Source of the DNA: Caecitellus pseudoparvulus
Lineage: Eukaryota; Protista; Bigyra: Bicosoecida
DNA: 64,000 nucleotides
Assembly: GCA_965644315.1 (NCBI GenBank)
Contig: CBFFRQ010000069.1
Coordinates: 1,116,001 to 1,180,000, forward strand
Reading direction: 5' to 3'
How positions within the stretch are numbered: position 1 is the stretch's first letter; each line of letters begins with the position of its first letter. This document shows, one piece after another, positions 1 to 64,000 of this stretch. The notes beneath the pieces are model-generated. The model searched no databases. It was not told where the DNA came from and saw only the letters and a program-made list of their open reading frames with translations. The position numbers and the translations under genes are program-made.

Positions 1-1
1 A

Positions 2-25715: not shown

Positions 25716-25861
25716 ACACTGGGCATCAATTGGGGTCAAGCTGTGGTGAAATGTGTGGTAGGTGCACTCACAACATGCATTCACGTAGAATCCCACGCAG
25801 CTTTTCGAAGGCAAAGCTGGCGCGTCGCGCCAGGCATCAAGCACGCCAGTAATCTGAAAGA

Positions 25862-30900: not shown

Positions 30901-31394
30901 AATCTGTGAAGATGCACACTTTCATTCTACCTCGCCAGCCCGCTCTGTTGGCGGCTTCCGAAACGCGGGAATCAATTACTCCTCAGCAAGTGCTGCTGGC
31001 CACTGAGAGCGGCTCAGTGATGGCGCTGCCTGCCCCACTGCTGGACCCTCGTCGCCCATTGGCCCCTCCGTCTGCCCACGAGAAAGCAGAGAAGCTGCTC
31101 CAATACGCACCGTTCCTGCCACTGTCCCACGAGGCCTTTGTGACGAAGGATGTGGTTGTGCCGCACATCACCCACCTGATTAGCACACCTACACAGCTGG
31201 AGTCAACGACCCTTGTCGTTGTTTGTGGACTGGACATTTTTGCCGGCAGACACCACCCCGTGAAAGCCTTTGATGTGTTGCCAGAAGATTTTAACGCGCC
31301 CCTTCTCATAGTGCTCATGGTGGCGCTTGCCGTCGGGACCGTGTACTTGCAACGACTGCTCAGGAGCAAGCAGCTGCGTGACAGCTGGAAGTAG
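27965..31394 (+). CDS. EMC1: ER membrane protein complex subunit 1, 3 exons, ~1084 aa
   Basis: Exons 27965-28187, 28292-28506, 28578-31394 (GTAAGT and GTGAGT donors). Signal peptide, then EVGQHEW..HVG and PQQ-like ARTGNLKWR. C-terminal EMC1 motifs DDSVLIRYLSPH, LIDAVSG, LLDPRRP, TQLESTTLVVVCGLDIF..P.KAFDVLPEDFN + TM + W. Confidence 0.93.
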
Positions 31395-31746
31395 CAAGCA
31401 GCCCTTGCAGGCAGGCGAATTCATGTGTGGTTCGCCCAGTGACAGTTTACATGGCCCCGGTCCCTCCCGTGCCGCAGCACCGCTCCACCTTTCCGTTGCC
31501 GCAAAGCCAGATCTCGAGCAAAAACGCAAGTCTAATAAGGCACAGAATTCCTGTGTGACCACCGTTGAAGCAAGCTTTGCTGCAGACACTCTCGAAGTGC
31601 CTGCTCTTTGTTGCGCGTGGTGCAGCTGCTGAAGCAGAGATAGGCTACTGCCGCACGCGTTTGAGGCCATGTGGCGCAGCACACGCTGCCTCGCACTCTG
31701 CGGCACACTGCTCCATTGCGGTCTCTCAATAGCTAAAGGTAGGATA

Positions 31747-34700
31747 ATGACTTCATTCTTGTTTTCCTTGGAGGGAAACGTGCTGCTCATGGCACTGCTG
31801 GCGATCGTGCATACTGCTGCGTTTCGTGTCTATGGTGTTTCGCCCAGAGCTGCAGCTGCAGCGCTCTCTCTGCCACGTGCACCCCTACCCGCCCCCACAG
31901 GATCAACACTAGAATCTGTCAGCCACCTAGAAGAGCATCGCTCAGGTATGCTTTGCTTGTGTGCAGCAGCAGCGCGTTTCCAGCAGCCTGAGCGGCACTG
32001 TGAGCACTTCCGCGTGCCACGCACTTGCAATGCGCAGGTCCTGGAGCGCCAGCTACTGTGGATCTCTTTGTCGCCTCCTCTTCTGCGCTCAGAGTTGATT
32101 TCACTCCACCAGAGGATGACGGAGGAGCATCAGTCACAGCGTTCAAAGTTGAGTGGGACACGGCGCCACCAGTTCAAGAGATTCAGGTGATCAGCACCTC
32201 CCTTGACCTGGGGCCAAATGAGATTCAAGAAGTCTCAACTTCAGGCATTCATGAAGATGAAGTCCAAGTGATCAAAACATCAGTCGATGAACTTCCCGAA
32301 GTCCAGATTGTCTCGACTTCTGCTGCGCCTGGTGAAGTGCTTGGAGGCTCTTTCTCACTCCTACTTGACTTGTCTTCACGCGGAGGGGCAAGGTTCACCT
32401 CAGGAAGCATTCCTCACCACGCAACGTCAGCACAGTTTGCAGCCCTGCTCGAGGCTATGCCCCCAATTGAACGGGCCAATGTGAGCCGGGCGGGCCCAAA
32501 TGGAGAGGGGGGCTACCAGTGGACAGTCACGTTTCTTTCACTTCACGGTGATGTCCCCGAGCTTGCCGTGGCCACATCCTCGTTGACTGGAACGGGTTCA
32601 GAAGTCAGCATTCGCACCGTTCAAGACGGGATGACCATCAGCGGCTCCTTCAAGTTGGCATTCCAAGGAGCAGAGACAGCGGCAATCCCTCACGACGCAA
32701 GTGACGCAGAGCTCGCTACGGCTCTCATGGATCTGGTGAGCATTCCGTCGGTAGAGGTAAACAAGGTGTTCGAGGATGCAAGCGGGGGCTCGGAGTGGGC
32801 TGTAACATTCAACAGCCCATACAATCGGGGAGACGTTCCTTCGCTGACAGCAGTCTCGATGCTGAATGGCCCGAATCCAAGCATATCCATTTGCTCGGAT
32901 GGCAGCCAGACTGGGATTTGTCAGAACACGACGACCCTGTCCAGGAGGGGAAATGAGCTGGCAGGCTCTTTCTCTCTGGCATTCGGGGGGCAAGAAACAG
33001 GCCCCATCCCTCACAATGTCAGCGCAGCTGGGCTCAAGGGGGCTCTGGAGAGCCTTAGCGGCATCGGTACAGTCGATGTGAGCCAGGGACCAGTCGATCA
33101 GACGGGGGGGTCAAGTTGGCAAGTCCTCTTTGCTACAGATGCCGGAAACCTCCCGCTCTTGTCTGCTCGGTCCTTCCTCACAGGCACGGGCGCGACAGTG
33201 CAAGTCAACACTGTTCACAACGGCACTGTACAAGAACAACAGCGCCTTTCGCTGGATCCCGCTGCTTCTGGGCAGTTTGGTATTGTGCTCCCCAGCCCTT
33301 GGTTTGCTGTGGCAGTATCCCCTGCCATTTGGATCGAAGCAGGCAATTGCACCCAAACTGCAAACAATGTCAGAGCCGCGCTGCAGGCGACAGTTAGTGT
33401 CGGCGCCGTGAATGTGGCATGTGCCTCTGACAGTCTGCTGGACATGGTGATCACTTTCATGGAGAAGGCTGGCGACTTTCCGCTGGTAGGACTGCAAACA
33501 GTCCCAGCCCCCAACTTCCCAAACCTTACAGTCCCCTACTCAGGACAGCCGCCGATGGTCACTGGCGTTGTTGATGGCACAGGTGTGAAGCTTGGAGGGA
33601 TGCTTGCTCTTTCCCACGGTGGAGAGCGAACTGGTTACCTCCCATTCAACGCTTCAGCTTCCCAGCTGCAGTCTGCGCTTCAGGCCATCCCATCGCTGGG
33701 CCGGGTTCAGGTGTCACGGGCAACGTCAGGTCCTAACGACGAGCAATCATGGTCTGTCACCTTTGTGGATGCAGTCGGGCCACAACAGCTGATAGGGCTT
33801 GATGCTGTTACTCTCACTGGCACGCGTGTTTCGGCCTCTGTGCGGAAGCAGCGAGAGGGAACCTTGCCTGGCTTCAATCAAGGTCCTGGAGGACTTGCCT
33901 TCGGCAGTGCCGTCGTTACAGACCTGACTGTATCAAGCTACATGATCGATAACCTCCGTCAAGGTGTCCCGTACTTTGTCCGTGTGTCAGCAGCAACTGC
34001 AGCAGGCTACGGTCCAGCCAGGGTCGCTCAGCCAGCAAGCGGCACCCCTTTTCCACAGCTCCCAGCAGGACCGCAAGAGGTGAGCTTGCAGTCAAAGTCT
34101 GGAGATTCTTTGGTGGTGTCTTTTCTGCCTACTCCTGACGATGGAGGTCTCGAGATTGTTGAGTACTTGGTGGAGCTCGATACAGCCCCATTTGCCGACG
34201 AGATTCAAGAAGTGGAGGTTACAACAGCTGTCACCAACGAGGTGCAGAGAGTCACGACCGCGGCAAACGATGAAGATGAAGTGCAGGTCATCCGGTTACT
34301 ATCGACTGCTTCTTCGACCAATATTGTCAATGAGGTTCAGGCCGTTGCGTGCAATGGTGTGGGGGGCGCATTCCGCCTGAACTTTGACGGCCACTTTACG
34401 GACGCGATATCGTTTGACGCCCCCCTTACATCGACTGGCCGCGGAGATTCTGTCGAAGAGGCCTTGGAGCGACTGCCTAACCTTGTCGATGTAATGGTTG
34501 AAAATTCTGGTGGACCCTCGGCTTCTCAGCAAGTGGCGTGTGCTGGCGGAACGCCACAGGAAGTCTTGGTTACCTTCATCGACACACTGCCTTTCCAAGG
34601 GGATGTACCCTTAATGACTGCAGACTTCGAAAGTCTGGAAGGGTTCAAGCATATCTCAATTAGTGAAGTGACGCAAGGCTCCGCGCCACTCTCCGGCAAC

Positions 34701-37700: not shown

Positions 37701-40700
37701 AGCACTCTTCAGGCGGAGTTAGAGAGCTTGGGTTCGATTGGGCAGGTAATTGTGCAAGGCCCTCACAAGCTCGACGGCCACGGTTCGGTGGCATGGGACA
37801 TCTTGTTCGTTGACTCTGTGGGGAACCTCCCGCAGCTGCAAGTCTCGTCAGGGCGCCTCGAAGGGAAGAATGCCTTCGGTCGCGTGTTCACGGTGGTGGA
37901 TGGCTCAACCGCAGTTCTGGCTTGGGATGGAACAGGCAAGGCAAACACTCACTCCGCTTTGATCCATGGTTTAGTTCCGGATAACACGTACGCCTTCAAG
38001 GTTGTTCCCCTCAATGCTGCCGGCAATGGAGTGCCGTCTGCAGCCTCCCAGACGGTCGTGACTAGATCTGGCGCCTCAGCCGCTCACTCAACGGCCAGAG
38101 GTGCTGCGCTGCGCCAAGGCATGGCAGGGGTCGTGTTTGAGCAGCAGCAGGTGCTCGTCATGGCACAAGGCTCGCCGAGTAACCTCGTGGGTGCTTCTTT
38201 CAAGCTCCGTCTGGGAAGTCATGGCGCTTTGTCGGAGCCCATCTCGGCAGCTGCTAGCCCAAGTGATGTTGAGCGTGCATTGTCTGGATTGTCGTTCACA
38301 GATGGCGTCTCATCGTCGACCATCATGAATGTCAGGGTGTCACGCGCAACACATGAATCTGATGGTAGTGCCTTTACCATCACCTTCCTGGGAAATCCTG
38401 GAAATCTTCCAGAGTTGCAACCACTTGAAGAGCTTGGTTTTGCTGGTGGTGCTCACGTGCAGGTCAGGGAGTTCGTGGAAGGCTCTGCGAATCAGTTCGT
38501 CATTGAACCCAGAAAGGCCAACGGCCAAGTGGTCCGCGACATCTTGACAGCAGAGGGCTTCAGCGGCTCGGATGTGTTCCTTACCGAATTGTGGGACGAT
38601 GCCGAGCAAGGCGAGCAAGGGACGCACACTTGGGCTGCTGATGGTGAAGTGGCCTCGTACAACCCGCCTGTGTATGAGATCCAGCATGTCACGCTTCGCA
38701 CTCCCGTGGGGGCACAGGCAACTTCTTTCTTGTTGGAGTTTGGGAATGCGCTCTACCCGCTTGGTGTTCACACGACGAGCGTCTTGAACGCCTCCTCATC
38801 CGCGGGTGACCTGCAAACTGCCCTCCAGCTTCTCCCAGGCTTGGGGGCTGTTGACGTGACAAGGACTGAAACTTTGGGTACGCTTTCAACGACAGTCTGG
38901 GCTGTTACTTTCCTCGGTACGCTTGGAGATGTTCCGTTGATGCGAGGCCTCGCGGTTTCGCTGAGCCAGAATGCTTCCGTGCTCGTCACGCCCCAGCAGG
39001 ATGGCGTGGCTGAGGTGCAAACTGTGACAACCTCCTCGACAAGTCAGTACGTGCCAGAGATACAGCGTCTGTCTTTCTTGGGGTTCTCTGGGGATGTGTT
39101 TGACCCTTCTGGGCCTAGTGCAGTCTTCTCGATTGACTATGAAGGAGGAGCGGTGGATGTTGACACTTCCGTTGATACGCCTTCCTCCTTGGAGGAAAAG
39201 CTGGAGGCATTGCCCGGAATCGACGACGTGGAGGTGCTTTGGAATGTTCAAGATAGTGTGCTGGATGTTTCCTTCCATCAGCCCACGGGTGATGTCAGCG
39301 CGATATCAGCTTCGCTTCTGTCCTCAAGTGATGGGTGCGCCGCCACGAGTGCATGCAAGCTTGTCTGTGACGAAGCCCGCAAAGGCTCCACGGCCATGCA
39401 GGGCACTTTTGTTCTGGCCTTCGGTGAAGGTGATGGGAGTGTCTCGGGCAGTATTCGACATGATGCTACTGCCGCCGAGGTGCAGTCCGCGCTGGATTCA
39501 CTGGCGCCCATTGGTGGCACAGCAGTGCAACGGCACCGCTTTGGATCGAATGGCTTCAGATGGACTGTCACATTTATCAAGAACGCGGGAAATCTTCCAA
39601 TGCTGCAGGCACTGCCCCAAGTGCATGAGATCCAGAGGATTGAATTGACGGGGGGCAGCCCGACGCCGATTCAAGGCGGCTTCTCACTTCTACTTGGACA
39701 CGAAAGAACTGCTGTCCTTCCTTTCGATGCGACGGCAGATGAAGTGAAGAACGAACTGCAAGGCCTGAACGCCCTGCACCATGTCGAGGTCTCGAGACAA
39801 GGGCCCATCGGAAACGGCCAGTTTTCTTGGACAGTCACGTTCCGGGACCCTGCGGGGGACGTGCCAGCGCTTCAAGCGGATGGAACTCACCTGCAGGGCT
39901 CCTCCGCCGAAATCACCGTTGAGACTCTGGAGGAAGGAGTGTCCAGAAGTCTTGTAGGCCCACAGGCGTCAGTGCGCGTCGAAGAGCGCGTCGCTGGCCT
40001 TCCAAGCTACACAGGAAGGTACACCCCTGCTCAAGTCGGGCCGTACTTCCTGGCGGTGCGCCAACTCCTGCCGGGGGGCCTCCAAGCGAGCTACTATGAC
40101 AACCAGTGGCTTCAAGGGGCGGCATCAATGACTCGCACAGACCCTGTCATTGACTTCAACTGGGGCACAGGTCTGGTCACTCATTTTGGTAGAGACTATG
40201 TCTCTGCAAGGTGGCACGGGAAAATCGTGCATGCCCGCTCAGAGGTTGTAGCTCTGCACCTTTCTGGAGACGAGGGATTCCGCCTTTACTTTGACCATGA
40301 ACTCGTCATTGACAGGTGGGACTCATGCTGCTCGCCAGCCCATGCCAAGGTAAACTTCACGGCGAAGGCTTTCCACGACTTGAAGGTCGAGTTTCGGGAG
40401 CAGCTAGGGCCAGCATTCATCAGGTTGCAGTGGACTTCAGACACACTGCCACTGGAAGTTATTCCTCCAACAGCACTGTACTCGGCTGAACACATTCTTG
40501 GTTCACCGTTCAGCCTTGAGGTAGTGCCGGGTGCTGCCGACTACCCGTTCACTGATGCGAATGGTGCCGGCCTGTCCCACGCTGTGGCTGGGGTCACCTC
40601 TAGCTTCATTATTCAGGCAAAAGACTCTGTCGGTAGCAACAAGACTTCTGGTGGTGATTCCTTCTCTGTTACATTGGAAGGGGGCGCAGGCCCCATCCCG

Positions 40701-43700
40701 CAGCAGCTCTCGCTCCCGACGCAGTACATCGGAGGCGGGCAGTACTTGGTCTCATACACGACCACACTGTCAGGCAACTATTCCCTGAGCATTCTCGCAG
40801 GGGTGAGTAAAGGGTCGCTGACTTCTTCTGGTCAGCACATTCAGTGTGGCCTCGGAAGTGAATTTGCTTGCAGTCCTTTCAATGTTGTGGTTGCACCCGG
40901 AGCCACCACAGCAAGGACATCCGACGCTCTTTCAGGCGATGGGCTTCTACGAGGAGTAGTTGGGGAGGTCGCGCAATTTCATATCCAAGCAAAGGACACT
41001 TTCGGAAACCTGAAGCAAAGTGGGGGGGACTCCTTTGAGGTAAATGTGGTGGGGGTGTTGACCAACACCACGTACGCTGCCGACGTGTCCGATCTCGGAG
41101 ATGGCACATACTCGGTGCAGTACACAGCACTTCAGTCGGGTGAATACGACGTGATGGTTTCACTCGATGAACAACGCGTACTCACTCTTGGCACTCTTCA
41201 GCCTGCCCGCATCAGTGTCGTGCACGGAGCGCTGCACGGACCAAGCTGCACAATGGCTGGCCCTAACCTTGATGCCTCAACTTCTGGTGAGGAGGCAAAC
41301 GTCACAGTTTATGCTCGAGACGCATTTGGAAACTTGCGCACCGGAAAGGGACAAGGTGACGGCCAATCAGATGTCTTCTGGCTTACAGCGACCCATGCGG
41401 CTACTGGGGCTGTGGTAGAGTCAAGCTCCGTGAGGCACACTCTGGCCATCCAGGCAGATGGAGGCACATTCTCTATCGAAGCTATGGGCAAGTCAACCCC
41501 ATCTCTTCCTTTCGATGTGCCGCCGACAGTGCTGTCTGCAACCATCCTTGAGTATTGTGGCGTGGAAGTCAAGGTGCAGGAGGTGTCTGCTTTGCCAAGC
41601 AGACAGCTTCTGCTGACCCCGCTTCGACCAAGCACAGCGTGGTATGCCATGCATATGTGGGAAGTGAAAAGTGCTGCCCTGGTCTTGGGCTTGGGCCTCG
41701 GCTCTGCTCAGATTGAAACGGCAGCCTCTGGGCGGGGGGTTTACCCCATGTTGTTCACTTTGTACCAAGCGGGGCCGTGGCAGATGAACATAACGACTCC
41801 AGAGGGGCGCCATGTCAATGGTTCACCTCGCTCTGTCAACGTCAGTGTGTCCGGACCCGATGCAAGGTCTTCGGAGGCATATGGGCAGGGCCTTGTCGGG
41901 GGCATCGCAGGGGAGACTCTGCAGTATGGGGTTCAAGTTCGTGATGCAGGAGCTGTCGAAGAGCAAGTTATTCTCATTGTCTCGGAAGATGTACCCGAAA
42001 GGCCTGATGAGTATGCTTTCACGTGCTTGTCAGCCACAAGCTTAACCGTGAGCATCGCAGGAATAGCTTCTGAGCCTGTAGCCAGCTCTGGGTCGACCTC
42101 GACAGCGACTGCATTGGCAGACGCGCTCTCCGCACATCCACTGCTGGCAACTGCAGTTTCAAGTGGCCGGGCATCTGTTTCAGTCACTTTGCGATCAGGG
42201 TCGGCCAGCCCATTGTGTGGAGCTGGAGAGCTCGTGCACGTGTCCGTGTCAGGCATGGGGCACCTGCCTGCCGTTCAAGTTCTGACTCAGCCGAGTGCCC
42301 GGGCTACGATGGTCCATGCTGAACATTCGAGGGGCACGTCGAATTCCCGCATGGAAACCGTTCTTGTGTCTTGCATGGCTGAATCAGGTTCTGTGACGTT
42401 CGGCTTCAGGGGCTTGTCAGTTAATGTTTCGGCGGCCGCCCCGCTGTCTGGATCAGCTTCATCTGTGGAAGGGCTTCTGAACTCCATGGGCAGCATGGGA
42501 CAGGTGCGAGTCACAGGCAACGGCACGCAGCTCTGCTCCACGGGCGATGTCTTCATTACATTCCTTTCGTTGACAGGCAACGTCGAGCTGCCAAGTGTGT
42601 TCCCTGCAGCCAACATTTCGGTGTCTGAGGTCCTCCCTGGGATCCACCCACACTCTGGTACGTTCCGACTTGCCTGGGGACACGATACAACGGAGCCCAT
42701 CCGGCATGATGCTTCTGCTTCGGAGGTCTCAGCTGCTTTGGAGGGCCTAGAAAGTTTTGGGGCAGCCACCGTGACAGAGACCTTCGTGGGAACGTTGGCG
42801 GGTGGGAGAGCAAAATCCGTGGCGTGGTCAGTCACGTTTGACAGGTATGGCTTCCCCGCCATGATCGGAAACGTCCAAGCACTTGCCCCGCTGTTTTCTT
42901 CTTCTGCGCTGCAAGCTCCGTTAGGGGCAACAAGCTCGCCACGGGTGACAGTCACCGTCGTCAACGAAGGCACACAGGGAAATCCAAGACCCCAAGGAGT
43001 GGACTTGCCCGTCGTCTCTGCGTCGGTCAACCATACGTCATTGGACACCACAGTGGGAGGGAGGGAGCTTGTCCATGTCAACTGCACTGCTGATAATGGG
43101 ACCTTGCGATTGATTTTCTCACATGTTGAAGTGGTGCTGAGCAGTACCGCATCCTTGAGCACGGCGTCATCCACGCTGAACTCAGCCTCCACCATTGCCG
43201 CGGTGGGAGGGGTGGTGGTCACTAGTGATAGGGACTCCTCAATTTGCTCTCCCAGTGGATCCTCCATCCTCATTGCCTTTGTCGCAGACGGAGACATGTC
43301 GCAGCTGGTTGCGGATGGGCAGGACCTGGCTCTGAGTGGTGGCCGTGGAAGCGTGGTTGTGTCCCTTGCCACCAATGGAGGTCTGCAAGTGACTCCGTCC
43401 CAAGAATCGGGCCTCTACAGTGTATCCTACACTCCAGTTCTGAAGGGGCAGTACATTGTCCAGACGTTCCTCAACGGGGGTCTTGTCTCGACTTCACATG
43501 ACGTTATCGTTACAGTGCTGCCGTCTGAAGTTCGCGCACATGCACCCAGCTGCAGCCACACCGCTCAAGCGTTTGCAGTCCAGGGAGAGGAAGAGACTTT
43601 CCTGATACAGGCACGTGATGTCCACATGAACGAGCTTGATGGACCTCTTGCTAGCCGTGATGAGTTCTTGGTTTTTGTTGATGGTGTTGCGGCTACCGAA

Positions 43701-46700
43701 GCTGGGCATTCTGGCGAGCATGTGCGCTTGCGAGCAGAAGTGTCTAGCGACGCACCAAACACTGATGGAACCTACAAAGTGGCATACCTTCCCACTAAGG
43801 CAGGGACGTTTAAAGTGCACGCATCTTTGCGGCGCTCAGGGGGCCTCTTGGCGACCTACTTCAGAAGCTCCGACTTTTCCAGCCCTGTGCTGGCCGACGC
43901 TGTTGGGAACCTAACCCACTGCCCCCCCAACCTCATTGAATGTGATTCAACTCGTGTGGATTCCGCCGTTGACTTTGATTGGGGGCTGCTGGCTCCCCTG
44001 CCGGACTTCCCCGGCGACTTTTTCAGCGTCAGATGGAGTGGAGATGTCCTCTCACCATACACAGGAGCAATCCGCTTCACAGTCATCGCAGACGATGGAG
44101 CACGACTCATCATCAACGGAAAAGCCATCATTGACCAGTTTGACTTTTCGGAGGATCGCATGGGAGGCACAATTGAACTTGTAGGAGGGCGCATGTACAG
44201 TATTCAGCTGGAAGTCAAGGAAAGCACCGGGCGCGCTTCTGCGAAGCTGGAATGGAGCTACCCGGGTAGAACTTCTCATACTGTCCCAAGTTCGCACCTC
44301 TTCTTCACTCGCCATATCGCACGCTCCCCTTCCACCGTGGTCATCGTCCCAGGCGCAGTTTCTGCGATGGCAACCACCGCGGCTGGACATGGACTGGTTG
44401 GCTCCGTTGCTGGGAGTGTGGCCTCCTTCACGATCACAGCCAGGGACTCCGCCGAGAACGTCAGGTTCAACAGTGGTGCGGATTCTTTCCAAGTAGAAGT
44501 GGTGGGGCAAAGCGATTGGGCCTTGCAAGGGCGCACGAACGATCAAGCAGGAAGCGCTCCGCATAGCGTGCCTGCCCTAGTGCAACCCGTTGACTGGCGA
44601 AGCTTACCTGGCACAGCCAGCATTCAGGCGGGGTCTTCTACGCTATACAGCTCCATTGACTTGACTTCACATGTTCAGCGGGGGGACCGCCTTGTTATTG
44701 GTCAGGAGTTGCACACAGTGTCATTCGAGGGACAGTTTGACTCACGTCAAGTGCCGCTGCAGCGAGCGCTTGGAGGAGACGCCGTATCAAACTTGACTGT
44801 CTTTGCTGCCGGACCTGCAACTGGAACTCACGCTGTGTCTTTCACTCCCACCGTTCGGGGGCAATACTCTGTTTCTGTGCTCAGGCCGGCCGTGCAGGAA
44901 GTGCAGTACTTCAGCATCTCAGCCTCGACGGCAATTCGCGGCACCTTCGCAATTGAAGCAATGGGGAAGAGATCGCTTGCTTTAAACGTGGCATCAACTG
45001 AGTCAAGCCTGATGGCATCGATCTCGGCCATGGGCCCCGCCTTCGCCTCGGTGACAGTGTCAGTGGTTCCTCCAGCGCTGAGTGCAAACATGAGCCTTGC
45101 ATGGTTCGTAACGTTCAGCCCAGAAGATGGCAATGTGGAGCTGCTGAGACTTGACACCCGTGGGTTGGTTGCAAACGATTTGTCGGTGGACATGCGAACC
45201 CTGACCGAAGGTGTCCGCAAGCAGCACATCTCCGGATCCCCCTTCTCCATGACTGTCGTGCCATCTGACAGCAGCGCCGCTATGTCCACTGCATTCGGAA
45301 GCGGGCTCTCCTCAGCCACTGCGGGGAAAGTAGCGAATTTCACCATTCAGTCAAAGGATGAATATGGAAATAATCGGTTGACTGCTCAGGGCCCAGAGGA
45401 CTACGTGATATTTGGCTCGCTGGCCTCCCCGGCGGACTCCAGCGTCGAGGCGCGAAGCAGTGGTTTCAACGCGACCTACCGCCACCTGGATGACGGAAAG
45501 ACGGAAGTCACATATGTAGCGAACGTTACTGGAGACTACATTATCTCCGTTGGTATGGTTGATAGGAAAGCCAAGTACCTGCTTCAAGTACGTTTGCCAA
45601 GGGGCCCACGAAGCACGGGCGAGTTCCTCTTCTCATGGGCCGGGCATGACTCAGTGCCTCTTGCATCTGATGCTGAGGCAGCTGATGTCAGTGAGGCCTT
45701 GTCTCGCATGCCTGGCATTCGAAATGTGGATGTGACTGGTGAGATTCACTCAGACGGGGCGGACTTTGAAATTGCCTTCATCCACGATGCTGCGCTTGAG
45801 CTGGACCTTGTTCTAGCTACTGGTCAGAGTTCACCTTCCGCGGCCATCGTGACCTTGACGAAAGTGCAGCCAATGTCCTTGCGCCACATCAAAACTCAGG
45901 CTCAGCCCATTCTCAACGAAGTGCAGACACTAGTCGTTCAAGGGGAACCTCATGACACCTTCCAACTTATGCGGGCAGGGCAGCGCACTGTCCCGCTTCA
46001 CATCGGGTCTACGAGCCAAGAAGTGCAGGATGCCCTCCACGCACTTTCATCAGTGCACTCCGTTCAAGTGGAGGCACTTCCCCCTGCAGGGAACTCATCA
46101 TCATGGCACGTTACGTTCTTGGCGCAAGCACTGGATGGGAGGCTTACCCACCACACACACCTCGGGCCGCAACCACTCCTCACAGTGCATGCCTCAGAGG
46201 ACAACGTCACCTCGGCCTCATTCAGTGCGCTTGTTCTTCCCACAGCTCAGCGAGGGGCTGCGCCGTTTCTTACTCGCGTACTCCCTTCGAGTCTTGCCGC
46301 TACGATGACGTCGGCGACAGAAGATGCAACACGAGGCTTAACCTCCGGCACCTATAACACCACTGCATCATTCCACATTGAAGAGCGTGATGCGTTCGGT
46401 AATCGCATCTACTCTGACCACGACGTTGAAGTGCAAGTTCTGAGGCTTACGAGGGGCAGCAGCATTGCAGGGTCGCTAGCGTTGCAGCTGTCTGGATTCC
46501 GTACACCCTTCCTCCAGGCTCAAGGTCTCAGCGCCGCAGCTATAGAGGTCGAGCTAGAAGCACTGCCTATAATCGGATCTGTCTCAGTGCTTGAGAGAAA
46601 TTTGTCCACTTCTGTGGTCGAGTTCGCCGTCACCTTCAATAGTGATGCTGGAGATCTGCCACCACTGGCTGTGGAAACGAAAAACTTTGCAACAGGCATG

Positions 46701-49700
46701 TCTGCCGAAATTCTTGCTTGTGAGCGATTCCAACACCAACGAGTAACGCTTTTGGCACCAAGTAACTCAAGCATTGGAGGAGAATTCGCCTTGGTCTGGA
46801 ATGGACACGAGTCCTCGCGGCTAAGTGTCGAGGCGAGCAATGAGGACGTGCGACGTGCTCTGCAGGCACTGCCAGGCGTGCTCTCAGCCCGCGTAGCAAC
46901 ACCACCCGCCTTAGAACTTGGACAAATCCGAAACTGGGACGTCTTTTTCGAGTCGGTCACCTCTCCGCTGTCTCTGCTAGTCCCTGAAGGCCGCTGGCTG
47001 GTCGGGTCAGGGAGCCGAGTGGTCGTCGAGGAGGCATGCCCGGCAGGGCACACTTTCGCCACCACTGCTGGGAGGCTGCCTCCTGCCTTCTACCTTCAAC
47101 TCTCGGGGCCTGAAACTGTGTCAGGTGTCGTGACCCCTGCCGGGGCCGGCATGCACCTTGCACAGTATAAGGTCCCGAGGAGCGGGGACTACAGGATGGA
47201 CGTCTCTCTGCTGACCCCAGGAGGGCTGCTTGGGGAATACTTCAGTAATCGATGGCTGCACGGGGCTGCAGCCATGAAACGGGTGGACAGCCATGTCAAT
47301 TTCTTCTGGAAGACTCTCATCCTTCCAACGGCAGAGGACTTCGTTTCCATTCGGTGGACAGGCTTCATTGTGTTTCCATTCAGTGAACGCTTCACCTTTA
47401 CTGCTCACGTCAATGATGGGTTGAAGCTTTGGATCGGCGACGAAGTAGTGATTGATGCCTTTGACCTTGCATTCAATTCCTCGACTCAAGGAGACTTTGC
47501 GGAAGCTCGAGGCACACTGTCTTTCAAGGCTGTGAAAGACCAGCCCTACCCTGTACAAATCGAGTATCGGGAGAACACTGAAAGCGCAGTGGCAAGACTA
47601 TACTGGCAGAGTTCCTCCCAGCCAAGGGTCCTGGTTCCACCTGCTCACTTGTACTATGCAGCTGAGCCCATCTCAGGTTCCCCATTCACCATTCAATCTG
47701 TGGGTATCGTCCCAAGGCGTCCACAGGGTGTCGAGGTGGAGGTGCTGTCCTCCCAGGGCTTGCGTGTACAGTGGACACCGCCACTGGAAGATGGAGGGTC
47801 TGCCATTTCTCAGTACCAAGTTCAATGGTACACTTCTCAGCCTGAGGTTGAGATTCAAACGCTTGTGCTGTCGGGTGTGTCCGGCAGCGCTGAGGCAAGC
47901 CTCTTCATTGTCAGCTTCCAAGGCTTTCACACTGAAGCAATGGCTGTGGGCAGCCCTTCCAATGCTGTTGAGGAGCAGATAGAACGGATGCCGGGAATTG
48001 GTGATGTCCAAGTTGTGTGTGCAACTCAGGAGCAATGGGGGCAGCTGCCTTGCCCTCAAGACACCGCCGGGCGTGTCGTGTATGAAGTGGCTTTCCTCTC
48101 GTACGTCAGACAAGTCCATGCGGCGCCCCATGGAAACTACGCAACAGCTGATGTACCTAATTTGGAGGTGCAAGGTGCCCTCGGTGTCGGCCAGCATGAG
48201 GTGTGCGTCTCAGGGCACGTGACCGTGGCTTGCAACGCATCGCAGTCGCGTGACGGGGGAGACTATGGGGGCTTTTGCTCCCCAGCTGCAGATAACCCGT
48301 GCGGCATCGTTTCAGCCAGCGACCTGCAAGCCTCTCACAGAAAACTGCAGTACGATATCCAACGCCTGTCACCGGGAGTTGAGTACTACGTGCGGGTATT
48401 GGCGTACAACTCGCAAGGCTGGGGTTTCGCCACAACTGCCAAGACTGAAGTCCCGCGTGATACACCGGAGCCACCACAAAGCCCTTCACTTCGTCTCTTT
48501 GGAGACGAGCCTGATGCTCTCCTTGTCCAGTGGGAAGCCCCCAAGAGCGACCGAGGAGCACCGGTGACACACTTCACAGTGTCTTGGCGGGCCGTGAATG
48601 AGTCAAGCTCACCCTGGCTTGAAGCCACATTGCCTGTTTCCGAAGCAGCATCAGGCATGCAAGGGCCGGACCATTTTTCCTACGTCATCAAGGAGCTACA
48701 GCCTGGATACGAAGTTGGAGTTACGGTTCAAGCCACCAATGCTGTCGGTCGCAGCTCTCGGGCGGCGACCATGCCCCACTCAGCGGTGCCATCTGCACAA
48801 GCAGATGTGATTGAAGCCGGGGGCGTTACAGTTGAAGCGCGCTATGTGGGAGCTGGTGTCTCGGTACATGAGTCCAGCAGCACCCTGCACGTTTCCTGGG
48901 TCCCGCCTCAGGATGCTCGAGGCTCGCAACTTGAGTCATTCAGAGTAACTGCATGCTCTGGTCCAGGAAGGCAGGAGATTCAGTCAGTTGCGATCGAGAA
49001 CTCTGAGGGGGGTTCATTTCAATTGCAGATCTCGTCCGAGACGAGTATTCCTTTGTCGTGGAACGCCACCGCAAAGGAAGTCAGGTCTGCCCTCCTCGGC
49101 TTCAACAGTGTTTCCGACGTTCAAGTTGAACGTGTTGATGTTCTACCTGCACCAGCTACGTCTAGTGGCGGAGTGCGCTGGTATCTCAACTTTGAAGAGG
49201 ACATGGGACAAGTGGCACCTGTGGTTGTGCATGATGAGCACTTAATTGGCTCTGGCCCACCAGGAACCCTCTCAGTGACAGTCCAAGTGGGTCTGACTGT
49301 CCAAGCTTCGGCGACAGCATCGTTGTCACAAGGCGGCCAAGAAATAGTTGTGAATACTGCTGACATGGTGGAAAGGGTGGATGAACTAGACTGGGTGCAG
49401 TACGGGTCAAGTTCGAGCAACACTGCACGAGTGTCGCAAGTTCAAACCGACGGGGCTTTGACACGGCTTCGCCTTGAGAGCAGCCTCGAACCAACGAGTT
49501 CTGGAAGCGGTGCACTACTGGTTGGTCAAACTCCACGTGGGAAGATGTGCGGGGGTCAAACGATGCGCTTCGTTCAGTTCGAGGCCACTCAGCCTCGCTA
49601 CGAGCTGACACTTGAAGATTTGAAGCCTGGAGCTTCCATTGCAGTGTCCGTCAGTACCATGAGCAACAGAGGGCTTTCAAAGAGCAGGCTTGCAACGCCA

Positions 49701-52700: not shown

Positions 52701-55700
52701 GTCAGCTCATACAACACGTCGATCATGCCGGTCATCGTGCGTGCTTCAGAAGCCGCTCCTGGAAACGTGGTCGACCTCGGTGTGCCTTCGGCGCCTCTCG
52801 CACCTGTTGCTTCGCTGCACGTCGTATCAGGGGAATACCTGGGTGTCATCATTCGACCTGCAGAGAATTTTGGGCAAAGCCCCACAGAAAAGTACATCGT
52901 GGAGTGGGACACAAGTCCCTTCTTTGCAGGCTTGACCTCCCCGGGTGAAGCCGCCTCACGTTCCGAGACCGTGTCAGCCGCGTCGTGCAGGTTGCTGCCC
53001 TTAAGCGACTACTGTGACTGGGACACCGCAACCGGTACTGTCCGCTTCAAGCTCCCCGGGAGTGACTCTCACCCCTTGGTCGAAGGCTCGCAATACTACG
53101 TCCGGGTGCAGGCAGTGGACACTCTCAGCAAACAGTCTGCCCCGACCCTTACTAGCCCCCAGTCCGCGACGCCCCTTCCGCAACTTCCACACACACTGGA
53201 CAGCTTGCACGTCAGCAGGTCGCCAAACTATGTATCCAACCAACTCTTGCTCTCTGTCGCAGCCCCCAGTGTTGACGAGAACGGGTTCAAAGTTCATGCT
53301 GGCGGGAGCGAGGTAGTTGCCTGGCGAGTCGAGCTGGCGGCCAATCCGGACTTTCACGGTTCCCGACAAGTAGACATTCCAAATTACGTCGACGGCACAG
53401 CAAACAGTGTCCAACAGTGCCTGAATGGGGTTCCTTGTCATATGCAACTCGGAGCTGAGGTCCAAGCGGTGGATGTTTCATCACGAGAAGGCAGCTTCAA
53501 TTCGGGCAGCTTTAGACTGTCCGTGCAGGGCAGCTCAACGCCATGCTTGGCTGTGAACTCCTCTGCAGCCTCGGTGCAAGCAAATCTTGACGCTCTACTT
53601 GGCTCAAGTGGGCTTTTTGCTGTTGCATCTGCTGAACTGTCCAACGGGCTGAGAACCCACAGGCGCTTCTTTATTCGTTTTGCTGGAGCAGACGTGAGTG
53701 GGGACCAGCCTCTGCTCCAAGTGAGCTTGGAAGGATGCCAGGCGTTTGCAGCAGGGCCGGGGCTGACTGGCTCTGGATTCGATGTTTCTGTCCAGCGCCT
53801 GATCCCAGGCTCCCTGCTGGAGCAGGGCACTGTGTACCATATTCGTGCCAGGGCCGTCACAGCAGTCGGCGCCGGCGCTCCAGCAGTCGCAACGGGCAGC
53901 CCAATCTACCCGGCGGGCCTTGCCTCCCCACCAGCCGGTCCGGTGACTGTGGAAGCCGTGGTGGACAACAGTCTCGAGCTCTTTGTTCGCTGGGCGGCTC
54001 CAGCAAATCAAGGAGGGGCTTCTTTGTCTGGGTATGTTGTTCGCTGGCGGGCGGCCCCATTAGGATCGCCACAAGGGCCATGGTGCGGCACTGGGAATGA
54101 TACAGACTGTTTGTTTGTTGAGGCGCACTCAACCAGCGCAACGCTGCCCGTGCCAATCGCGGGGGTTCCCTACCAGGTGGCCGTCTTCGCCCGAACTTTC
54201 CGTGGTGACGGAGCTGTCGCACTTGCCACCCCAACATGCCAAGCTGGGTTGGAAGACTGCATTCCTCACGTGCCAGGATTCCCTGACCGCATCGTCTCTC
54301 GAGCTTTGCCTTCACAGCCAATGAACTTCATTGCTGGGGGGCTTCTGTCTCCGAACGCTTTCTCAGCTTCCAGCGTACAGCTGTCGTGGGCCGAGCCAAC
54401 AGACGACGGAGATGCCCCCATCTTGAAGTACAAAGTAGAGTGGGACACGTCTCCAACATTCGATTCCAGTGTGAGTGGTATGCCACTGTCATTTGATTCT
54501 GCGTTGGGCATGTCCCCAGAAATCCTGGGGCCTTTTTCGGCAGGCGAAGTGTTCTACGAGGTGACAAGCCTGCAGCCAGGTGTGACCATGTTCTTCAGAG
54601 TCACAGCTGCAAACAGTCTTGGCTTTGGCGTTGAATCTGCCCTGCAGTCATCCACGCCCTTGGAGCTGCCATCTGTGCCAACAGACGTACTGCTTGTCAC
54701 TCAGCCAGAATCCGAGTCTGCCGAGAAGCAAGGCACGTCCTTGATTGTGCAACTGAGTCAACCTGTGAGCATCGGTGGGTCCTCAATCATTGAGTACTTT
54801 GTCGAGTGGGCCTTGGAGTCTTTTGATGGGGAAACCCCAGACCAACAGGTTGTCAGCATTGACGTGTCTGGAGGTGCAGCTGTCGGTGGTTTCCTGCGCT
54901 GCCGCCTGGACACTTCACCCGCCGCCTGCCCACACTGCCCGGTGCAAGGTGTTTTCGTTTCACCTCGCTTCTCCGTCTCTGCTTCAGCCTCGGAGGTCAA
55001 GCAGGCCATTGAAGTGATGCCGAATACCGGCCAAGTTGCTGTCAGCGGTGGTGTGCCGTCGACGAACGGATCCACCGCATGGGTGATCACTTTCCTGCAC
55101 GTGACAGGTCCGATGCCAAGTCTCACCATAGACACCAGCCACGTAACTTCCAGTACATCGCTGGCAGATGTGACGGTTTCAGTGAATTCCGTAGATCCGC
55201 GACGCGTCCCAGGCAGGACGGTGTCAGGCTACTGTCAAGGGCAGCCTAGCTGCCATCGCGTGGCCCCAGCACCCGAACCGCACAGCCCTACTCAGGTTTC
55301 AATCACTGGTCTTGTCCCAGGTGAAAGGATCTTTGTTCGGGCCACTGCACGCAATGCGCTGGGGCTTGGTCCCACCCAAGTCAGTGCACCAGTCTCCCTG
55401 TCGCCACCACTCCAACCTCCCAGTCCGCCCACCTCGGCCACCAACTTACTCGGCAAACCCACACTGTATAGGCTGGGGTCGAACATGCTTCAAGTGGCGT
55501 ATGGTCCTCCACGGTTTGATGGTGGGGACCCGGTTGTGAAGTATAAAATCGAATGGGATCCGTCTCCATTGTTCGACTCCGGGGGCACAGGCCCGGGTGG
55601 AGAGAGTCGCCCGATCGCATGGGCTGAAGTCCCTGCACCAGCCACCCAAGATGGCGCGCAGTTCTTCACTGTTGCCTTGCCCCCTAATCTGCAAGCAAAC

Positions 55701-58700: not shown

Positions 58701-61700
58701 ACTGTTCACCGGAACATTGCCGTTAATGGCTTTGCGTGGAAGCTGTCGATCTCTATCCGGCACACTGAGCAAGACCTTGGCGGAGTGCTGAGCGTGGATG
58801 GGACCGGCTTAACTGGCCTAAACCCAACTGCTGCTCTTGACGCTTTGCACGAAGTGCAGATGTTGCGCTGTGAAGGCGGGGTGGCGGGCGGGATCCGCTT
58901 GTCATTCCGCGGGAACGGAGTAGAAGTCAGCCATTCAGCCACGCCGCACGCCTTGGCAACTGCCCTGCAGACGCTACCACTCCTAGGCAACGTCAAAGTC
59001 ACATCTGCGTTTTCCTCCATATGTGGGGCCCAGGTCAGGCGCACGAGTATCACTTTCATGCAGCAGCAAGGCGATGTGCCCCTCCTCGGCTCTGACACAG
59101 CCGGTGTCAGCCTTGAAGAGGCCCGGAAGGGGCAGCTCCAGTACTCACCAGGACGAAGCCCCTTCGGGTTGACTGTCTCTGGGCTGAATGATACGGAGAG
59201 GTATTACTTTAGGGTTGCGTCGTACAACATCCTAGGCCACGGCAAATTCTCGCTTGCCAAAGCAAGGTGGCATGAGCAGCCAAGCACAGCCCATTCACCT
59301 GCAACTACCTGGCCCGACGCTCCCCGCGGGGCCTTGTTCACACAGGTTGACAGCTCAAGAGCAAACTTGACTGTCCGCCTCCCCCCCTTGACAAGTGGGG
59401 GTGGAGGAATCGCCGCGTACGTCCTCTCTTTGGATCCACAACCGACTTTCACGAGCGCCGCAGATTGTGGGAGCCGTACAGAAAAGCAACTCATCCAAGT
59501 GTCCATGTCTTCACCTCCATCAGGACAAGTTGATCAATTGAAGCTGGAGTTCGCGTTCCATGGATATGTTGTAGAAACCCAGTGCCTCAGCCTGAGCTTG
59601 GACACTTGGACAGGATTCGAGACTGCCCTGGAAAACGAGTTGGCGTCCACGAACCCTTTCGTCACGGTCGATGTAACCATCGTCGGCGATTCTTCTGCAG
59701 AAACGGAGTACGGGAGGTCCATTGTGCTGGAGTTCGCTGAGCACTCCTTGCCATTTGCTGACATTCCTCAAGCACGTGTGGTGACCTGCTCAGGCTCTTT
59801 TTCGGCAAGCTACGTCAGCTCCACCATCCAAGATGGTCGTGGAGACGGTACCAATTCCGTGGGGTCGTGTGAGGCGCAGTTTCTGGCTCCCATCAAGCAA
59901 GAAATCTTCTCAGGCAACTCCTTCGTGGTATCTGGACTTGTTCCTGGCGTCCCGATGTTTGGCAAGCTGCATGCAGTAAACAGTGCGGGGTTGCAAGGAC
60001 CTGCGTTCTACCTGTCGGACCCGTTGGTCTTGAAAGCCCCTCCCTTGCCTCCGGCAGGTGCGGAGGTCACCCCACTCTCGGAACACAGCCTCTTTGTGGA
60101 CGTCACGCCATCCTTGGGGAGCACTAGCTTGGGAAATGAGGGCAGCACCATTCATTCCTACACTGTATTTGCAGCCGGTGCTTCGATCGAGGAGGCCGAG
60201 GTGCAGCACGTAACCGTGGATGTCGATGCTGACACGCTCAGTGCTGGTGAACTGCGCCTTGTAGCCGACGGCTACTACACTGAGTGCCTTCCACTTCCGC
60301 TATCAGGATCAGACGTCGAAGTTGAATTAGCCCTTCTCCCAATGATTAAGCGTGTAGCAGTCGTGGACCAAGCGAACGGCACCCTGCATGTGGAGGTCAC
60401 AGAGAGCGGTGACGTTCCACAGTTGGGCTTCTCAACTGCCGGTTGCCAGCCTGTGTCACCGCCAGGCAGTCTGCAAGGAAAGGAAGTCGTGACAATCAAC
60501 AACGGGTACTCACTACCAAAGCCAACCATCTTACGTGTAGCGACGGAGAGCAGCTTTCCGATCGCCGGAAACGTGAACGTGTTGGGCGGCTTTCATGGAA
60601 CCCTCGATGAACAAGTTTGCCCAGCATGTGCATCTCTTGACCTTGGGGAGGATCCCAGGTTTGTCCTGTTGACGGGATTCCCCCTTGCAATCGCTGAACT
60701 GGCAGTAGGCCAGCGGGTGAGAGTGGATGGCGTGGAGCACACCATCGCGTCCTTGACTGTTCATGAGCAAGGCATCCGTCTATCCACTGCCCAACCCCAC
60801 CCACGCAGTTTCTTTGGAGAGCCACTCTTTGTAGACGAGACTTACGTGGGGATCGGGCGTTTGAACGAAACTGACTCTACGATGCTCCAAACACGTCGCG
60901 ACCTGTCCAGCCGCCTGCGTGGCCCGGGAGCGACCATCAAAGTCGGTGACCATGTTCACACAGTCATGTCCGTTTCAGGGCATGTGGTGATGGTTGCGGA
61001 GCCCATTCTGGGTCAGCGGTCGGCAAACATTCCTTTGTTTGTTCGGGATGAAGTTCAGATTCCCTTCGACGCGACTGAGCAAGTAATCGTTGCTCACATG
61101 GCTCAGCTTGCTGGTGCTGGGCGCGTCAATGTCCAAACCTGGGGCCCTGGGGCCAATGGAGCGATGGTGTGGGAATTGGAAATGCGGAGCACGAGGCCTG
61201 GAGACGCTGTTTCTCCACAGTTGCAAGTGTCTGCTGTGGACGCTGCTGGCGTGGTGACGCTTGAAGCTCCTGCAGGAAGTGGTAATGCCGCTGGCCTTGT
61301 CAGCTGGACCCAGCAGGGGGGAACATGGGGCGAAATTCGACCATCTTCGTCCCTCGCAACAACTCGAAGCGCTGTTGAGGTTCAACGAGTGTCGGTCTTG
61401 ACGCGAGGGTCACTGCCTGCCAGCATGCAGTTTGCTCTGATTGACTGGGACACACCTGCGAACGAGGTGCAGATTGACATCGACTCATCCCCGGAACATG
61501 TGCAGAGCCTACTGCATGAGCACCTTCGAGTGCTTGGCCGAGTGTCAGTGAGCTCTGAGCCACTGCCAGCCGGATTCAATGGGGCGGTGTGGCAAGTGAC
61601 ATTTTCGTCCAACCAAGCGTCGCTGCCCCTCCTCGGCCTCGGTCCGATTCAGTGCCCAGAGGAGGCGGCCCATGTGACATGCCCAGTTGCATCTGACATG

Positions 61701-64000: not shown

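What the first reader, a model, noticed from the sequence alone, without database searches (positions are those of the whole stretch)
31747..64000. Hidden >10,700-aa gene occupying half the window, absent from the ORF track
Seen: one + frame appears stop-free from 32004 to 64000 (~10,665 codons) and joins a signal-peptide-like exon through a clean 92-nt intron. It encodes ~24 FN3, ~9 filamin and 3 PA14 domains plus dozens of inserted modules. Established: these are extracellular/scaffold beta-sandwich and lectin-like folds; I recall similar giants in oomycetes being loosely labelled 'titin'. Inference: a very large surface fibre or adhesin, such as a coat or prey-capture structure, with no characterised function that I know of.
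Basis: partly seen in the sequence, partly recalled or inferred. Interest (0 to 1): 0.85.

Follow-up and report, generated by a model that had tools for sequence, protein, structure and literature searches.

The report
Giant secreted fibre protein gene
Half of this window is the front two thirds of one real gene for a 15,400-residue secreted protein of a marine stramenopile, built largely from an unnamed module that also decorates bacteriophage particles and occurs in the solved proteins of flagellar hairs; what the giant does is still unknown.

Summary
The + frame is stop-free from 32004 past the window's end to a TGA at window coordinate 78078. That is 15,346 codons in one 46-kb exon (1.6 MDa). 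A short hydrophobic first exon joins it through an in-frame GT..AG intron of 92 nt. Homologues fix both ends. Theirs begin with a signal peptide 20-40 residues before my residue 1 and end where mine ends.

No possible membrane helix follows exon 1, so the protein is secreted and unanchored. It holds about 41 FN3, 8 filamin and 3 PA14 domains.

Its main part, missed by Pfam-A and NCBIfam, is 68 copies of a ~100-residue alpha/beta module. This module is homologous in sequence and fold to the 'CTE-like' virion domains of mycobacteriophage Bxb1. It also occurs in tubular-mastigoneme (flagellar hair) proteins. AlphaFold puts one such module inside an FN3 loop; longer stacks look nested.

Relatives are uncharacterised giants of oomycetes (some labelled 'titin'), diatoms, Cantina and Vitrella.

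Best reading: an extracellular, multivalent glycan-binding fibre. This function is inferred, not shown.

The parts
31669..31945 (+). Exon 1: signal-peptide-like leader. Candidate start codons at 31669 and 31747.
   Evidence: Read directly. It holds the only strongly hydrophobic stretch of the whole protein: Kyte-Doolittle 15-residue mean 2.41 at residues 12-26 counted from ATG 31747, with a weaker one (1.82) after ATG 31669. Homologues carry a signal peptide at the same place.
31946..32037 (+). 92-nt intron, GTATGC...GCGCAG, phase 1.
   Evidence: The frame is restored across the join. An intron of the same genome, verified by protein conservation in HSP90, has GTGCGT...CGCAG. There is no transcript evidence.
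32038..64000 (+). Exon 2, window part. It continues without a stop to window coordinate 78077 (L002:1-10000 and L003:1-4077), with TGA at 78078.
   Evidence: Pfam hits to fn3, Filamin and PA14 lie all along it.
32058..32183 (+). N-terminal half (strands A-C) of the first FN3 domain.
   Evidence: Own FN3 HMM, positions 1-46 of 84.
32172..32339 (+). Cluster of four 'EVQ' first strands, about 13 residues apart.
32340..33821 (+). Five CTE-like module cores. Three lack a first strand of their own.
33861..34013 (+). C-terminal half of the first FN3 domain, 560 residues after its N-half.
   Evidence: FN3 HMM positions 35-83.
40125..40481 (+). PA14 domain 1.
   Evidence: Pfam PF07691; own HMM E 1e-59.
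40557..46466 (+). Filamin-repeat region: 4 intact repeats and 4 split by inserts.
   Evidence: Pfam PF00630, E 5e-57; own HMM.
43944..44306 (+). PA14 domain 2.
47274..47657 (+). PA14 domain 3 (also hits GLEYA).
54702..55382 (+). Composite unit that was modelled: FN3 N-half, one CTE-like module, FN3 C-half.
   Evidence: AlphaFold2 on alignment A3: pLDDT 86, pTM 0.79. Residues 43-171 match Bxb1 gp23 (Z 12.6, rmsd 2.0). Whole FN3 domains align over residues 9..227 (Z about 8, rmsd 2.3-2.6).
58815..59165 (+). Single CTE-like module that was modelled.
   Evidence: AlphaFold2 on A1: pLDDT 89.7. Bxb1 gp23 Z 13.1, Bxb1 capsid C-terminal domain Z 10.5.

Best explanation
This is one real two-exon gene of a stramenopile protist. 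It encodes a protein of about 15,413 residues (1.6 MDa). [quoted passage not shown]

Its chain is a backbone of about 41 FN3 and 8 filamin beta-sandwich domains. Into loops of about half of them are inserted 68 copies of a ~100-residue alpha/beta module, which I call CTE-like. The modules sit singly, in tandem, or as stacks in which n first strands come first and n strand-less cores follow. I read those stacks as out-and-back nested arms. Three PA14 lectin-type domains lie in the filamin region.

I infer that it works as a long, branched extracellular fibre that offers many weak glycan- or surface-binding sites at once: a cell-surface coat, hair or adhesive scaffold.

Shown: the gene, its ends, its domains, the homology of the module, and one domain insertion in a predicted model.
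Inferred: secretion, the nesting order of the deep stacks, and the fibre or binding function.
For: Gene:
- 15,346 stop-free codons.
- An ENA assembly of a second population encodes residues 9007-15346 with 34 substitutions, no indel and the same end.
- Residue 1 of exon 2 aligns to residue 21-40 of homologues that start with a signal peptide. The last 700 residues align to the very C-termini of at least 12 homologues.

Extracellular location:
- A hydrophobic leader in exon 1, and a maximum 19-residue hydropathy of only 1.55 across the other 15,346 residues.
- The Thraustotheca clavata homologue AIG55740.1 carries the 'secreted protein' label. The paper on that species' secretome defines it by SignalP, TargetP, WoLF PSORT and no TM helix (PMC4316629). 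I did not check that this accession is in the paper's list.
- 94 N-glycosylation sequons and pI 4.9.

Domains: Pfam fn3, Filamin and PA14. Own HMMs find 68 modules.

Module:
- Profile against the PDB: Bxb1 gp23 at E 1e-46, Bxb1 capsid protein at 3e-7.
- Fold: Z 13.1, 10.5 and 9.9 to Bxb1 and Patience virion domains, well above every other chain.
- PMC13252515 calls these 'CTE-like domains'. [quoted passage not shown]
- PHROGs tail sheath and major tail families; Microbacterium phages at 35% identity.

Insertion: split FN3 HMM hits and the AlphaFold model.

Family: colinear giants in Thalassiosira, Saprolegnia, Aphanomyces, Pythium, Albugo, Phytophthora, Cantina and Vitrella. Some come from transcriptomes.
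Against: - There is no transcript, peptide or localisation data for this gene. The splice and the start codon (31669 or 31747) are models.
- No signal-peptide predictor was available.
- Binding is inferred from what PA14 domains do elsewhere and from one sentence on Bxb1 accessory proteins. No ligand site was examined.
- The nesting order of the deep stacks rests on the order of sequence elements, and by analogy on the order of the Bxb1 gp23 half-domains. It does not rest on a model of the stacks.
- A protein with no anchor needs a partner to stay on the cell, and none was identified.
Confidence: 0.7

Rival explanations
1. It is specifically part of the flagellar hair apparatus, for example the thin terminal or lateral filaments of the tubular mastigonemes, rather than a general cell coat.
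For: The CTE-like module is a domain of mastigoneme proteins. Three small proteins of this genome (L017, L015, L014) match the chains of PDB 9ufe (tubular mastigoneme protein, OCM3, OCM5, OCM6) at E 7e-36 to 7e-18. Their modules hit the giant-derived HMM at E 3e-17 to 3e-8. The L017 alignment runs through the module. The broad module profile also reaches 9ufe chains directly at E 0.013-0.13. The family is found across stramenopiles.
Against: The giant has none of the EGF modules that make up the rest of the mastigoneme proteins. The module also sits next to an F-type lectin domain in another protein of this genome, so it is a general extracellular module. A homologue exists in Vitrella, which is not a stramenopile. 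Other, unverified notes of this scan name different giants that carry true mastigoneme modules.
Confidence: 0.17
2. The gene model is wrong in structure: more exons, a membrane anchor encoded downstream, or several genes read together.
For: No RNA data. Two candidate start codons. The ENA gene call starts at internal Met 9007.
Against: Split FN3 and filamin domains bridge the whole length, so any cut would break a fold. Homologues end exactly at this stop and start just before residue 1. The ENA start lies inside a module. A convergent minus-strand frame starts 60 bases after the stop.
Confidence: 0.06
3. It is an intracellular, titin-like elastic or cytoskeletal protein, as the database labels of its relatives suggest.
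For: FN3 and filamin repeats also build titin and filamin. Relatives are labelled 'titin'.
Against: There is a hydrophobic leader here and in homologues. PA14 domains are present. The module is known only from virion surfaces and extracellular hairs. No kinase, I-set Ig or actin-binding domain was found by Pfam.
Confidence: 0.03
4. It is a decaying or unexpressed relic.
For: None beyond the lack of expression data.
Against: 46 kb without a stop. Modules are only 14-32% identical to each other yet keep the fold-defining residues. A second population has no indel over 6,340 residues.
Confidence: 0.02

Closest known systems
Uncharacterised stramenopile giants: Thalassiosira profunda ACHAXT_009546, Saprolegnia parasitica SPRG_04153 ('Titin') and SPRG_03974, Albugo laibachii CCA13958.1 ('similar to titin isoform N2B'), Aphanomyces, Pythium, Phytophthora, a Cantina marsupialis transcript, and a Vitrella brassicaformis protein
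   Same: Same domain set and order. Same N-terminus (signal peptide, split FN3, cluster of first strands) and same C-terminal FN3 run. 28-35% identity over thousands of residues.
   Different: None retrieved exceeds 7,939 residues; this one has 15,413. None has a studied function, so membership says nothing about what the protein does.
'CTE-like' domains of mycobacteriophage Bxb1 (capsid, tail tube and tail-tip gp23; PDB 9d93, 9d9w, 9d9x) and related actinobacteriophage tail and capsid decorations
   Same: Homologous module: E 1e-46, Z 13.1, about 21-27% identity. Shared motifs EVQ, GxFxL and WxVTF. In the gp23 sequence three modules also appear as N-parts followed by C-parts, which is a nested order.
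   Different: A eukaryotic secreted protein, not a virion part. 68 copies instead of 1-3. Inserted into FN3 and filamin loops. In the giant's stacks the split lies after the first strand; in gp23 it lies later in the module.
Tubular mastigoneme proteins of stramenopiles (PDB 9ufe: OCM3, OCM5, OCM6, 'tubular mastigoneme protein')
   Same: They contain the same module between EGF domains, and they are secreted components of an extracellular fibre.
   Different: They are 200-750 residues long and EGF-rich. The giant has no EGF module and is 20-70 times longer.
Giant bacterial surface adhesins (for example the 1.5-MDa ice-binding adhesin MpIBP; recalled from memory) and PA14-bearing fungal adhesins (Flo, Epa; recalled from memory)
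   Same: MDa size, a long run of beta-sandwich repeats, and lectin-type domains for multivalent binding.
   Different: No RTX or type-1 secretion signal, no GPI anchor and no Ser/Thr-rich stalk were found. Ligand domains are spread along the chain rather than grouped at one tip.

Membership tests
Fibronectin type III domain (Pfam PF00041) | Profile match over the gathering score | tested here: met
   103-286 bits per piece against a cut-off of 25. FN3 structures align to the model with Z about 8 and rmsd 2.3-2.6.
Filamin/ABP280 repeat (PF00630) | Profile match over the gathering score | tested here: met
   191 bits, cut-off 26.9.
PA14 (PF07691) | Profile match over the gathering score | tested here: met
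   111 and 62 bits, cut-off 24; three copies.
PA14 (PF07691) | Calcium- and sugar-binding residues | not tested
   No trusted reference sequences were on hand to align.
Bxb1 CTE-like virion domain | Sequence homology | tested here: met
   E 1.2e-46 to gp23, 3e-7 to the capsid protein, 1.7e-3 to the tail tube.
Bxb1 CTE-like virion domain | Same fold | tested here: met
   Z 13.1 (112 aligned) and Z 12.6 (rmsd 2.0, 103 aligned). The next unrelated folds score Z 8 or less.
Tubular mastigoneme proteins (Ocm/Sig type) | EGF-type cysteine-rich modules around the CTE-like module | tested here: not met
   No EGF family hit anywhere in the giant. The genome's true homologues have EGF_2 and EGF_Teneurin hits.
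Tubular mastigoneme proteins (Ocm/Sig type) | Location in flagellar hairs | not testable with these tools
   Needs proteomics or microscopy.
Titin | Cytoplasmic protein with I-set Ig domains and a kinase domain | tested here: not met
   No Ig I-set or kinase hits. A signal-peptide-like leader is present.
Membrane- or GPI-anchored adhesin | TM helix or hydrophobic C-terminal tail | tested here: not met
   Maximum 19-residue hydropathy 1.55 over 15,346 residues. The C-terminus is polar and conserved as the protein end in homologues.
Stramenopile FN3/CTE giants (unnamed family) | Colinear homology including both termini | tested here: met

The most novel reading that the evidence does not exclude
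The giant is a so far unidentified filament of the stramenopile hair system, or a separate kind of extracellular hair. In that reading the CTE-like module is an ancient building block shared by, or exchanged between, tailed-phage virion surfaces and eukaryotic flagellar hairs. The nested out-and-back stacks would be a general way to build stiff side arms on a protein fibre.
Probability: 0.15. Interest if true: 0.85.

Novelty: new variant of a known kind. Interest (0 to 1): 0.6.

Why it matters
1. Annotation. A 46-kb single-exon gene is invisible to an ORF list cut at window ends. A public metagenome gene call truncates it to start at internal Met 9007. Giants like this are probably under-counted in protist genomes.

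2. An unnamed domain. Its main module hit 15,869 clusters in a library of 1.84 billion representative proteins. Yet it matches no Pfam-A or NCBIfam model. It links three settings never treated together as far as I could find: actinobacteriophage virion decoration, stramenopile mastigoneme proteins, and MDa-scale secreted proteins.

3. Architecture. The protein is not beads on a string. About half of its FN3 and filamin domains carry other domains inside a loop, in places about nine deep. That would make it a branched fibre with doubly tethered arms. If confirmed, it is a striking example of recursive domain insertion.

4. A route to experiments. It gives a concrete candidate for surface or hair proteomics in heterotrophic marine stramenopiles.

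Tried and rejected
- Literature (all 10 searches used). Nothing on SPRG_04153 or on FN3/filamin/PA14 giants of oomycetes. The Bxb1 structure paper (PMC12124961) is not held. The 9ufe paper was not found. An Aurantiochytrium proteome paper had nothing relevant. The Douge phage paper concerns different domains.
So I have no DNA of the second population and no dN/dS.
- The Foldseek PDB search alone gave only weak E-values (8e-3). The nested chain confuses it, with rmsd 15. VIA-align resolved the match.
- A count of first strands against cores in 162 FN3 brackets correlates well (r 0.92). I reject it as a test of nesting, because tandem modules give the same correlation. In two-core brackets the tandem order (49) is commoner than the nested order (7).
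- Self-comparison of the 28 unassigned gaps found only small families, such as an extension in front of the PA14 domains. About 6,000 residues remain outside my four HMMs.
- Organism. HSP90 matches at 100% only in ENA metagenome scaffolds, and at 74-75% in oomycetes and diatoms. I can say it is an unsampled stramenopile, no more.
The exons were handled apart, by reference.
One search repeats that scan by reference.
Full report
THE OBSERVATION

The window (59% G+C, no N) has a + frame without a stop from 32004 to its end: 10,665 codons. The window is G000:C69:1116001-1180000, in a 30.6-Mb assembly of 215 contigs. With the next 40 kb fetched, the frame runs on to a TGA at window coordinate 78078 (L003:4078). 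That is 15,346 codons counted from 32040. The genome search reports the same thing on its own: 'open frame 15358 aa, stops none'. About 3.6% of random codons would be stops at this composition, so chance is excluded. The ORF lister omits the frame only because it runs off the window.

THE 5' END

The sequence shows an ATG at 31747 and 199 nt of open frame with a hydrophobic stretch. The donor is G|GTATGC at 31945/31946 and the acceptor GCGCAG|GT at 32037/32038. The split codon restores the long frame.

One intron of this genome can be verified by protein conservation: the one in HSP90. It reads GTGCGT...CGCAG, so the proposed signals are of the local type.

The exon-1 leader holds the only strongly hydrophobic segment of the protein, with a 15-residue hydropathy mean of 2.41. 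The maximum 19-residue mean over the other 15,346 residues is 1.55, below what a membrane helix needs.

Each was used by reference.

BOTH ENDS ARE FIXED BY HOMOLOGUES

Residue 1 of exon 2 aligns to residue 21-40 of homologues from Thraustotheca, Thalassiosira and several metagenomes. Those begin with a typical signal peptide, followed by the same half FN3 domain and the same cluster of short strands. The last 700 residues align to the very C-termini of at least 12 homologues.

An ENA metagenome protein (P0004, 6,340 aa) equals residues 9007-15346 with 34 substitutions, no indel and the same end. It starts at an internal Met in the middle of a module, so it is a truncated gene call.

The gene therefore encodes 15,413 residues if ATG 31747 is used. 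The exon-2 part alone weighs 1.605 MDa, has pI 4.9, and carries 94 NxS/T sequons.

THE ORGANISM

Neighbouring genes are eukaryotic: EMC1, INCENP and a coiled-coil protein. HSP90 is 100% identical only to ENA metagenome scaffolds, and 74-75% identical to oomycetes and diatoms. The genome has clear homologues of the solved tubular mastigoneme proteins. It is an unsampled stramenopile flagellate.

DOMAINS

Pfam finds fn3, Filamin and PA14, and nothing else of weight. HMMs iterated on the protein itself give these counts:
- FN3: 20 intact domains, plus 21 C-halves and 14 N-halves, about 41 domains in all.
- Filamin: 8 repeats, half of them split.
- PA14: 3 domains.
All filamin and PA14 domains lie between residues 2696 and 5206.

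The largest component is something Pfam does not name: 68 copies of a module of about 100 residues. Its consensus runs EVQ strand, GxFxL, T..L, an ASA..V..AL..L helix, V.V.R, W.VTF, L.G...V.V. No Pfam-A or NCBIfam model matches more than 2 of 78 members. A profile of the module nevertheless finds 15,869 representative proteins at E up to 0.001 among 1.84 billion. Of these, 1,336 score below 1e-30, and the top ones are giants with up to 52 copies.

WHAT THE MODULE IS

A profile search of PDB sequences hits mycobacteriophage Bxb1 'tail tip cage gp23' at E 1.2e-46. It hits the Bxb1 major capsid protein at 3e-7 and the tail tube protein at 1.7e-3.

AlphaFold2 with the 34 paralogous modules as alignment gives a confident model (pLDDT 89.7) with six strands and one helix. 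Structural alignment gave these scores:
- Bxb1 gp23: Z 13.1.
- Bxb1 capsid C-terminal domain: Z 10.5.
- Phage Patience gp22: Z 9.9.
- Bxb1 tail tube: Z 9.4.
Tail-sheath outer domains and FliD D2-D3 follow at Z 6-8, then generic ferredoxin-like folds.

PMC13252515 calls the Bxb1 domains 'CTE-like' and notes three of them in the distal tail protein. [quoted passage not shown] Other phage evidence agrees: PHROGs families 'tail sheath' and 'major tail protein', a direct tblastn hit to Microbacterium phages at 35% identity, and BFVD hits to actinobacteriophage tail and capsid proteins.

THE MASTIGONEME LINK

The module profile also touched chains of PDB 9ufe (OCM5, OCM6, 'tubular mastigoneme protein') weakly, at E 0.013-0.13. 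I tested this through the genome itself.

Three small proteins were found with the module profile (L017, L015, L014). Their modules hit the giant-derived HMM at E 3e-17 to 3e-8. The same three proteins match the 9ufe chains at E 7e-36, 1e-32 and 7e-18. The L017 alignment runs straight through the module, which sits between EGF domains.

So the same module is a part of stramenopile flagellar-hair proteins. It also occurs next to an F-type lectin domain in another protein. The giant has no EGF module and is not a member of the mastigoneme protein family.

ARCHITECTURE

The FN3 HMM often matches as an N-half (positions 1-50) and, hundreds of residues later, as a C-half (45-84), with modules in between.

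I aligned 39 units of the form FN3 N-half, one module, FN3 C-half, taken from the giant and its homologues. I then modelled the one at window 54702-55382. The result had pLDDT 86 and pTM 0.79. Residues 43-171 superpose on Bxb1 gp23 (Z 12.6, rmsd 2.0 A, 103 residues). Complete single FN3 domains of neogenin, titin, LAR and others (75-82 residues aligned) superpose over model residues 9 to 227 (Z about 8, rmsd 2.3-2.6). In the model, then, the FN3 fold is closed by two segments 130 residues apart, and the module is an insert in an FN3 loop.

Where several modules are inserted they are either in tandem or arranged so that n first strands come first and n strand-less cores follow. Three examples:
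- Four strands at residues 45-100, then cores at 101, 200 and 307. A core at 438 has its own strand, and a further core follows at 518.
- Three strands at 13,488-13,525, then three cores.
- About ten strands at 11,690-11,810, then nine strand-less cores at 11,980-12,990.

The simplest reading is recursive insertion after the first strand. The chain goes out through the stack, giving each module its first strand, and comes back completing them. Bxb1 gp23 shows the same kind of order in its sequence: N-parts 268-325, 328-386 and 388-461, then C-parts 506-566 and 562-608.

FAMILY

Colinear relatives at 28-35% identity are listed below:
- Thalassiosira profunda: 6,581 aa.
- Saprolegnia parasitica SPRG_04153: 7,939 aa, 'Titin' in UniRef.
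- Albugo laibachii: 'similar to titin isoform N2B'.
- Aphanomyces, Pythium and Phytophthora proteins.
- A Cantina marsupialis transcript: 6,001 aa.
- An MMETSP transcript: 7,479 aa.
- A Vitrella brassicaformis protein.
The transcripts show that such genes are expressed elsewhere.

The T. clavata homologue is labelled 'secreted protein'. PMC4316629, the paper on that species' secretome, defines that set by SignalP, TargetP, WoLF PSORT and no TM helix. I did not check that this accession is in the paper's own list.

In this genome the module also marks other very long open frames: 11,595 aa on C31 and 7,607 aa on C68, among others. I found no paper on the family.

HOW IT MOST LIKELY WORKS

A signal peptide takes the chain into the ER. 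There is no anchor, so the protein is exported. About 50 beta-sandwich domains would give a rod of the order of 200 nm; this is my estimate, at roughly 4 nm per domain. From that rod project single modules and stacks of up to about nine modules, each junction held by two strands of chain. Three PA14 domains sit in the filamin part.

The module is known only from exposed surfaces of extracellular assemblies (virions, flagellar hairs). PA14 domains bind sugars in other proteins; that is established knowledge of the Pfam family, not tested here. I therefore read the giant as an extracellular, multivalent glycan- or surface-binding fibre: a coat, hair or adhesive scaffold.

I put the specific variant 'part of the mastigoneme system' at about 0.17. 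A wrong gene structure gets 0.06, an intracellular titin-like role 0.03, and a dead gene 0.02.

VERDICT

The finding is real and larger than described. It is a new, extreme member and variant of an uncharacterised stramenopile family of secreted giants. Its interest lies less in its size than in three things: the unnamed module it shares with phage virions and flagellar hairs, the domain-in-domain construction, and the fact that routine gene calling misses or truncates it.

First-reader notes of this scan had already flagged parts of the same gene on the same DNA.

Noticed in passing
window 1-18802 (frame begins 235 bases before the window, in L006): A second giant + strand frame of 6,345 codons. 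It has Ephrin_rec_like cysteine-rich repeats, one predicted TM helix at residues 4076-4104 and a tail of about 2,200 residues. It is probably a type I surface receptor or adhesin. It has no CTE-like modules.
   Followed up: partly
L017:2033-3730 (+), L015:2098-4296 (+), L014:2528-4723 (-), L018:2432-5230 (+): Proteins of 566-933 residues with EGF and CTE-like modules. L017, L015 and L014 are clear homologues of the solved tubular mastigoneme proteins (PDB 9ufe; E 7e-36 to 7e-18). The organism therefore very likely bears tripartite flagellar hairs.
   Followed up: partly
L016:1981-4257 (+): A 759-codon frame that combines an F-type lectin (fucolectin-like, E 6e-10 to PDB 3cqo) with a CTE-like module.
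   Followed up: partly
G000:C31 near 596,000 (-), G000:C68 near 172,600 (+), C87, C68 near 652,400, C69 near 116,000, C53: Other very long open frames (11,595, 7,607, 3,957, 3,770, 3,824 and 2,000 aa) that carry CTE-like modules. This looks like a paralogous family of giants in this genome.
   Followed up: no
window 42287-43375 (-) and 49943-51214 (-): Antisense ORFs of 362 and 423 aa inside the giant exon. They are most likely by-products of G+C-rich coding sequence on the other strand.
   Followed up: no
window 20169-31394: Ordinary eukaryotic genes lie between the two giants: INCENP-like (-), a 1,126-aa coiled-coil protein (-), and EMC1 (+).
   Followed up: partly
PDB 9d93 chain Ma (Bxb1 gp23), residues 268-608: At sequence level its three CTE-like domains are ordered N1, N2, N3 ... 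C2, C1. That is a nested arrangement, like the stacks in the giant but split at a later point of the module.
   Followed up: partly
L012, L013 (ENA scaffolds ZHEN20-1_SAMN07748060 and SAMN07748062): The same or a nearly identical organism is present in two public metagenome assemblies (HSP90 100% identical).
   Followed up: no
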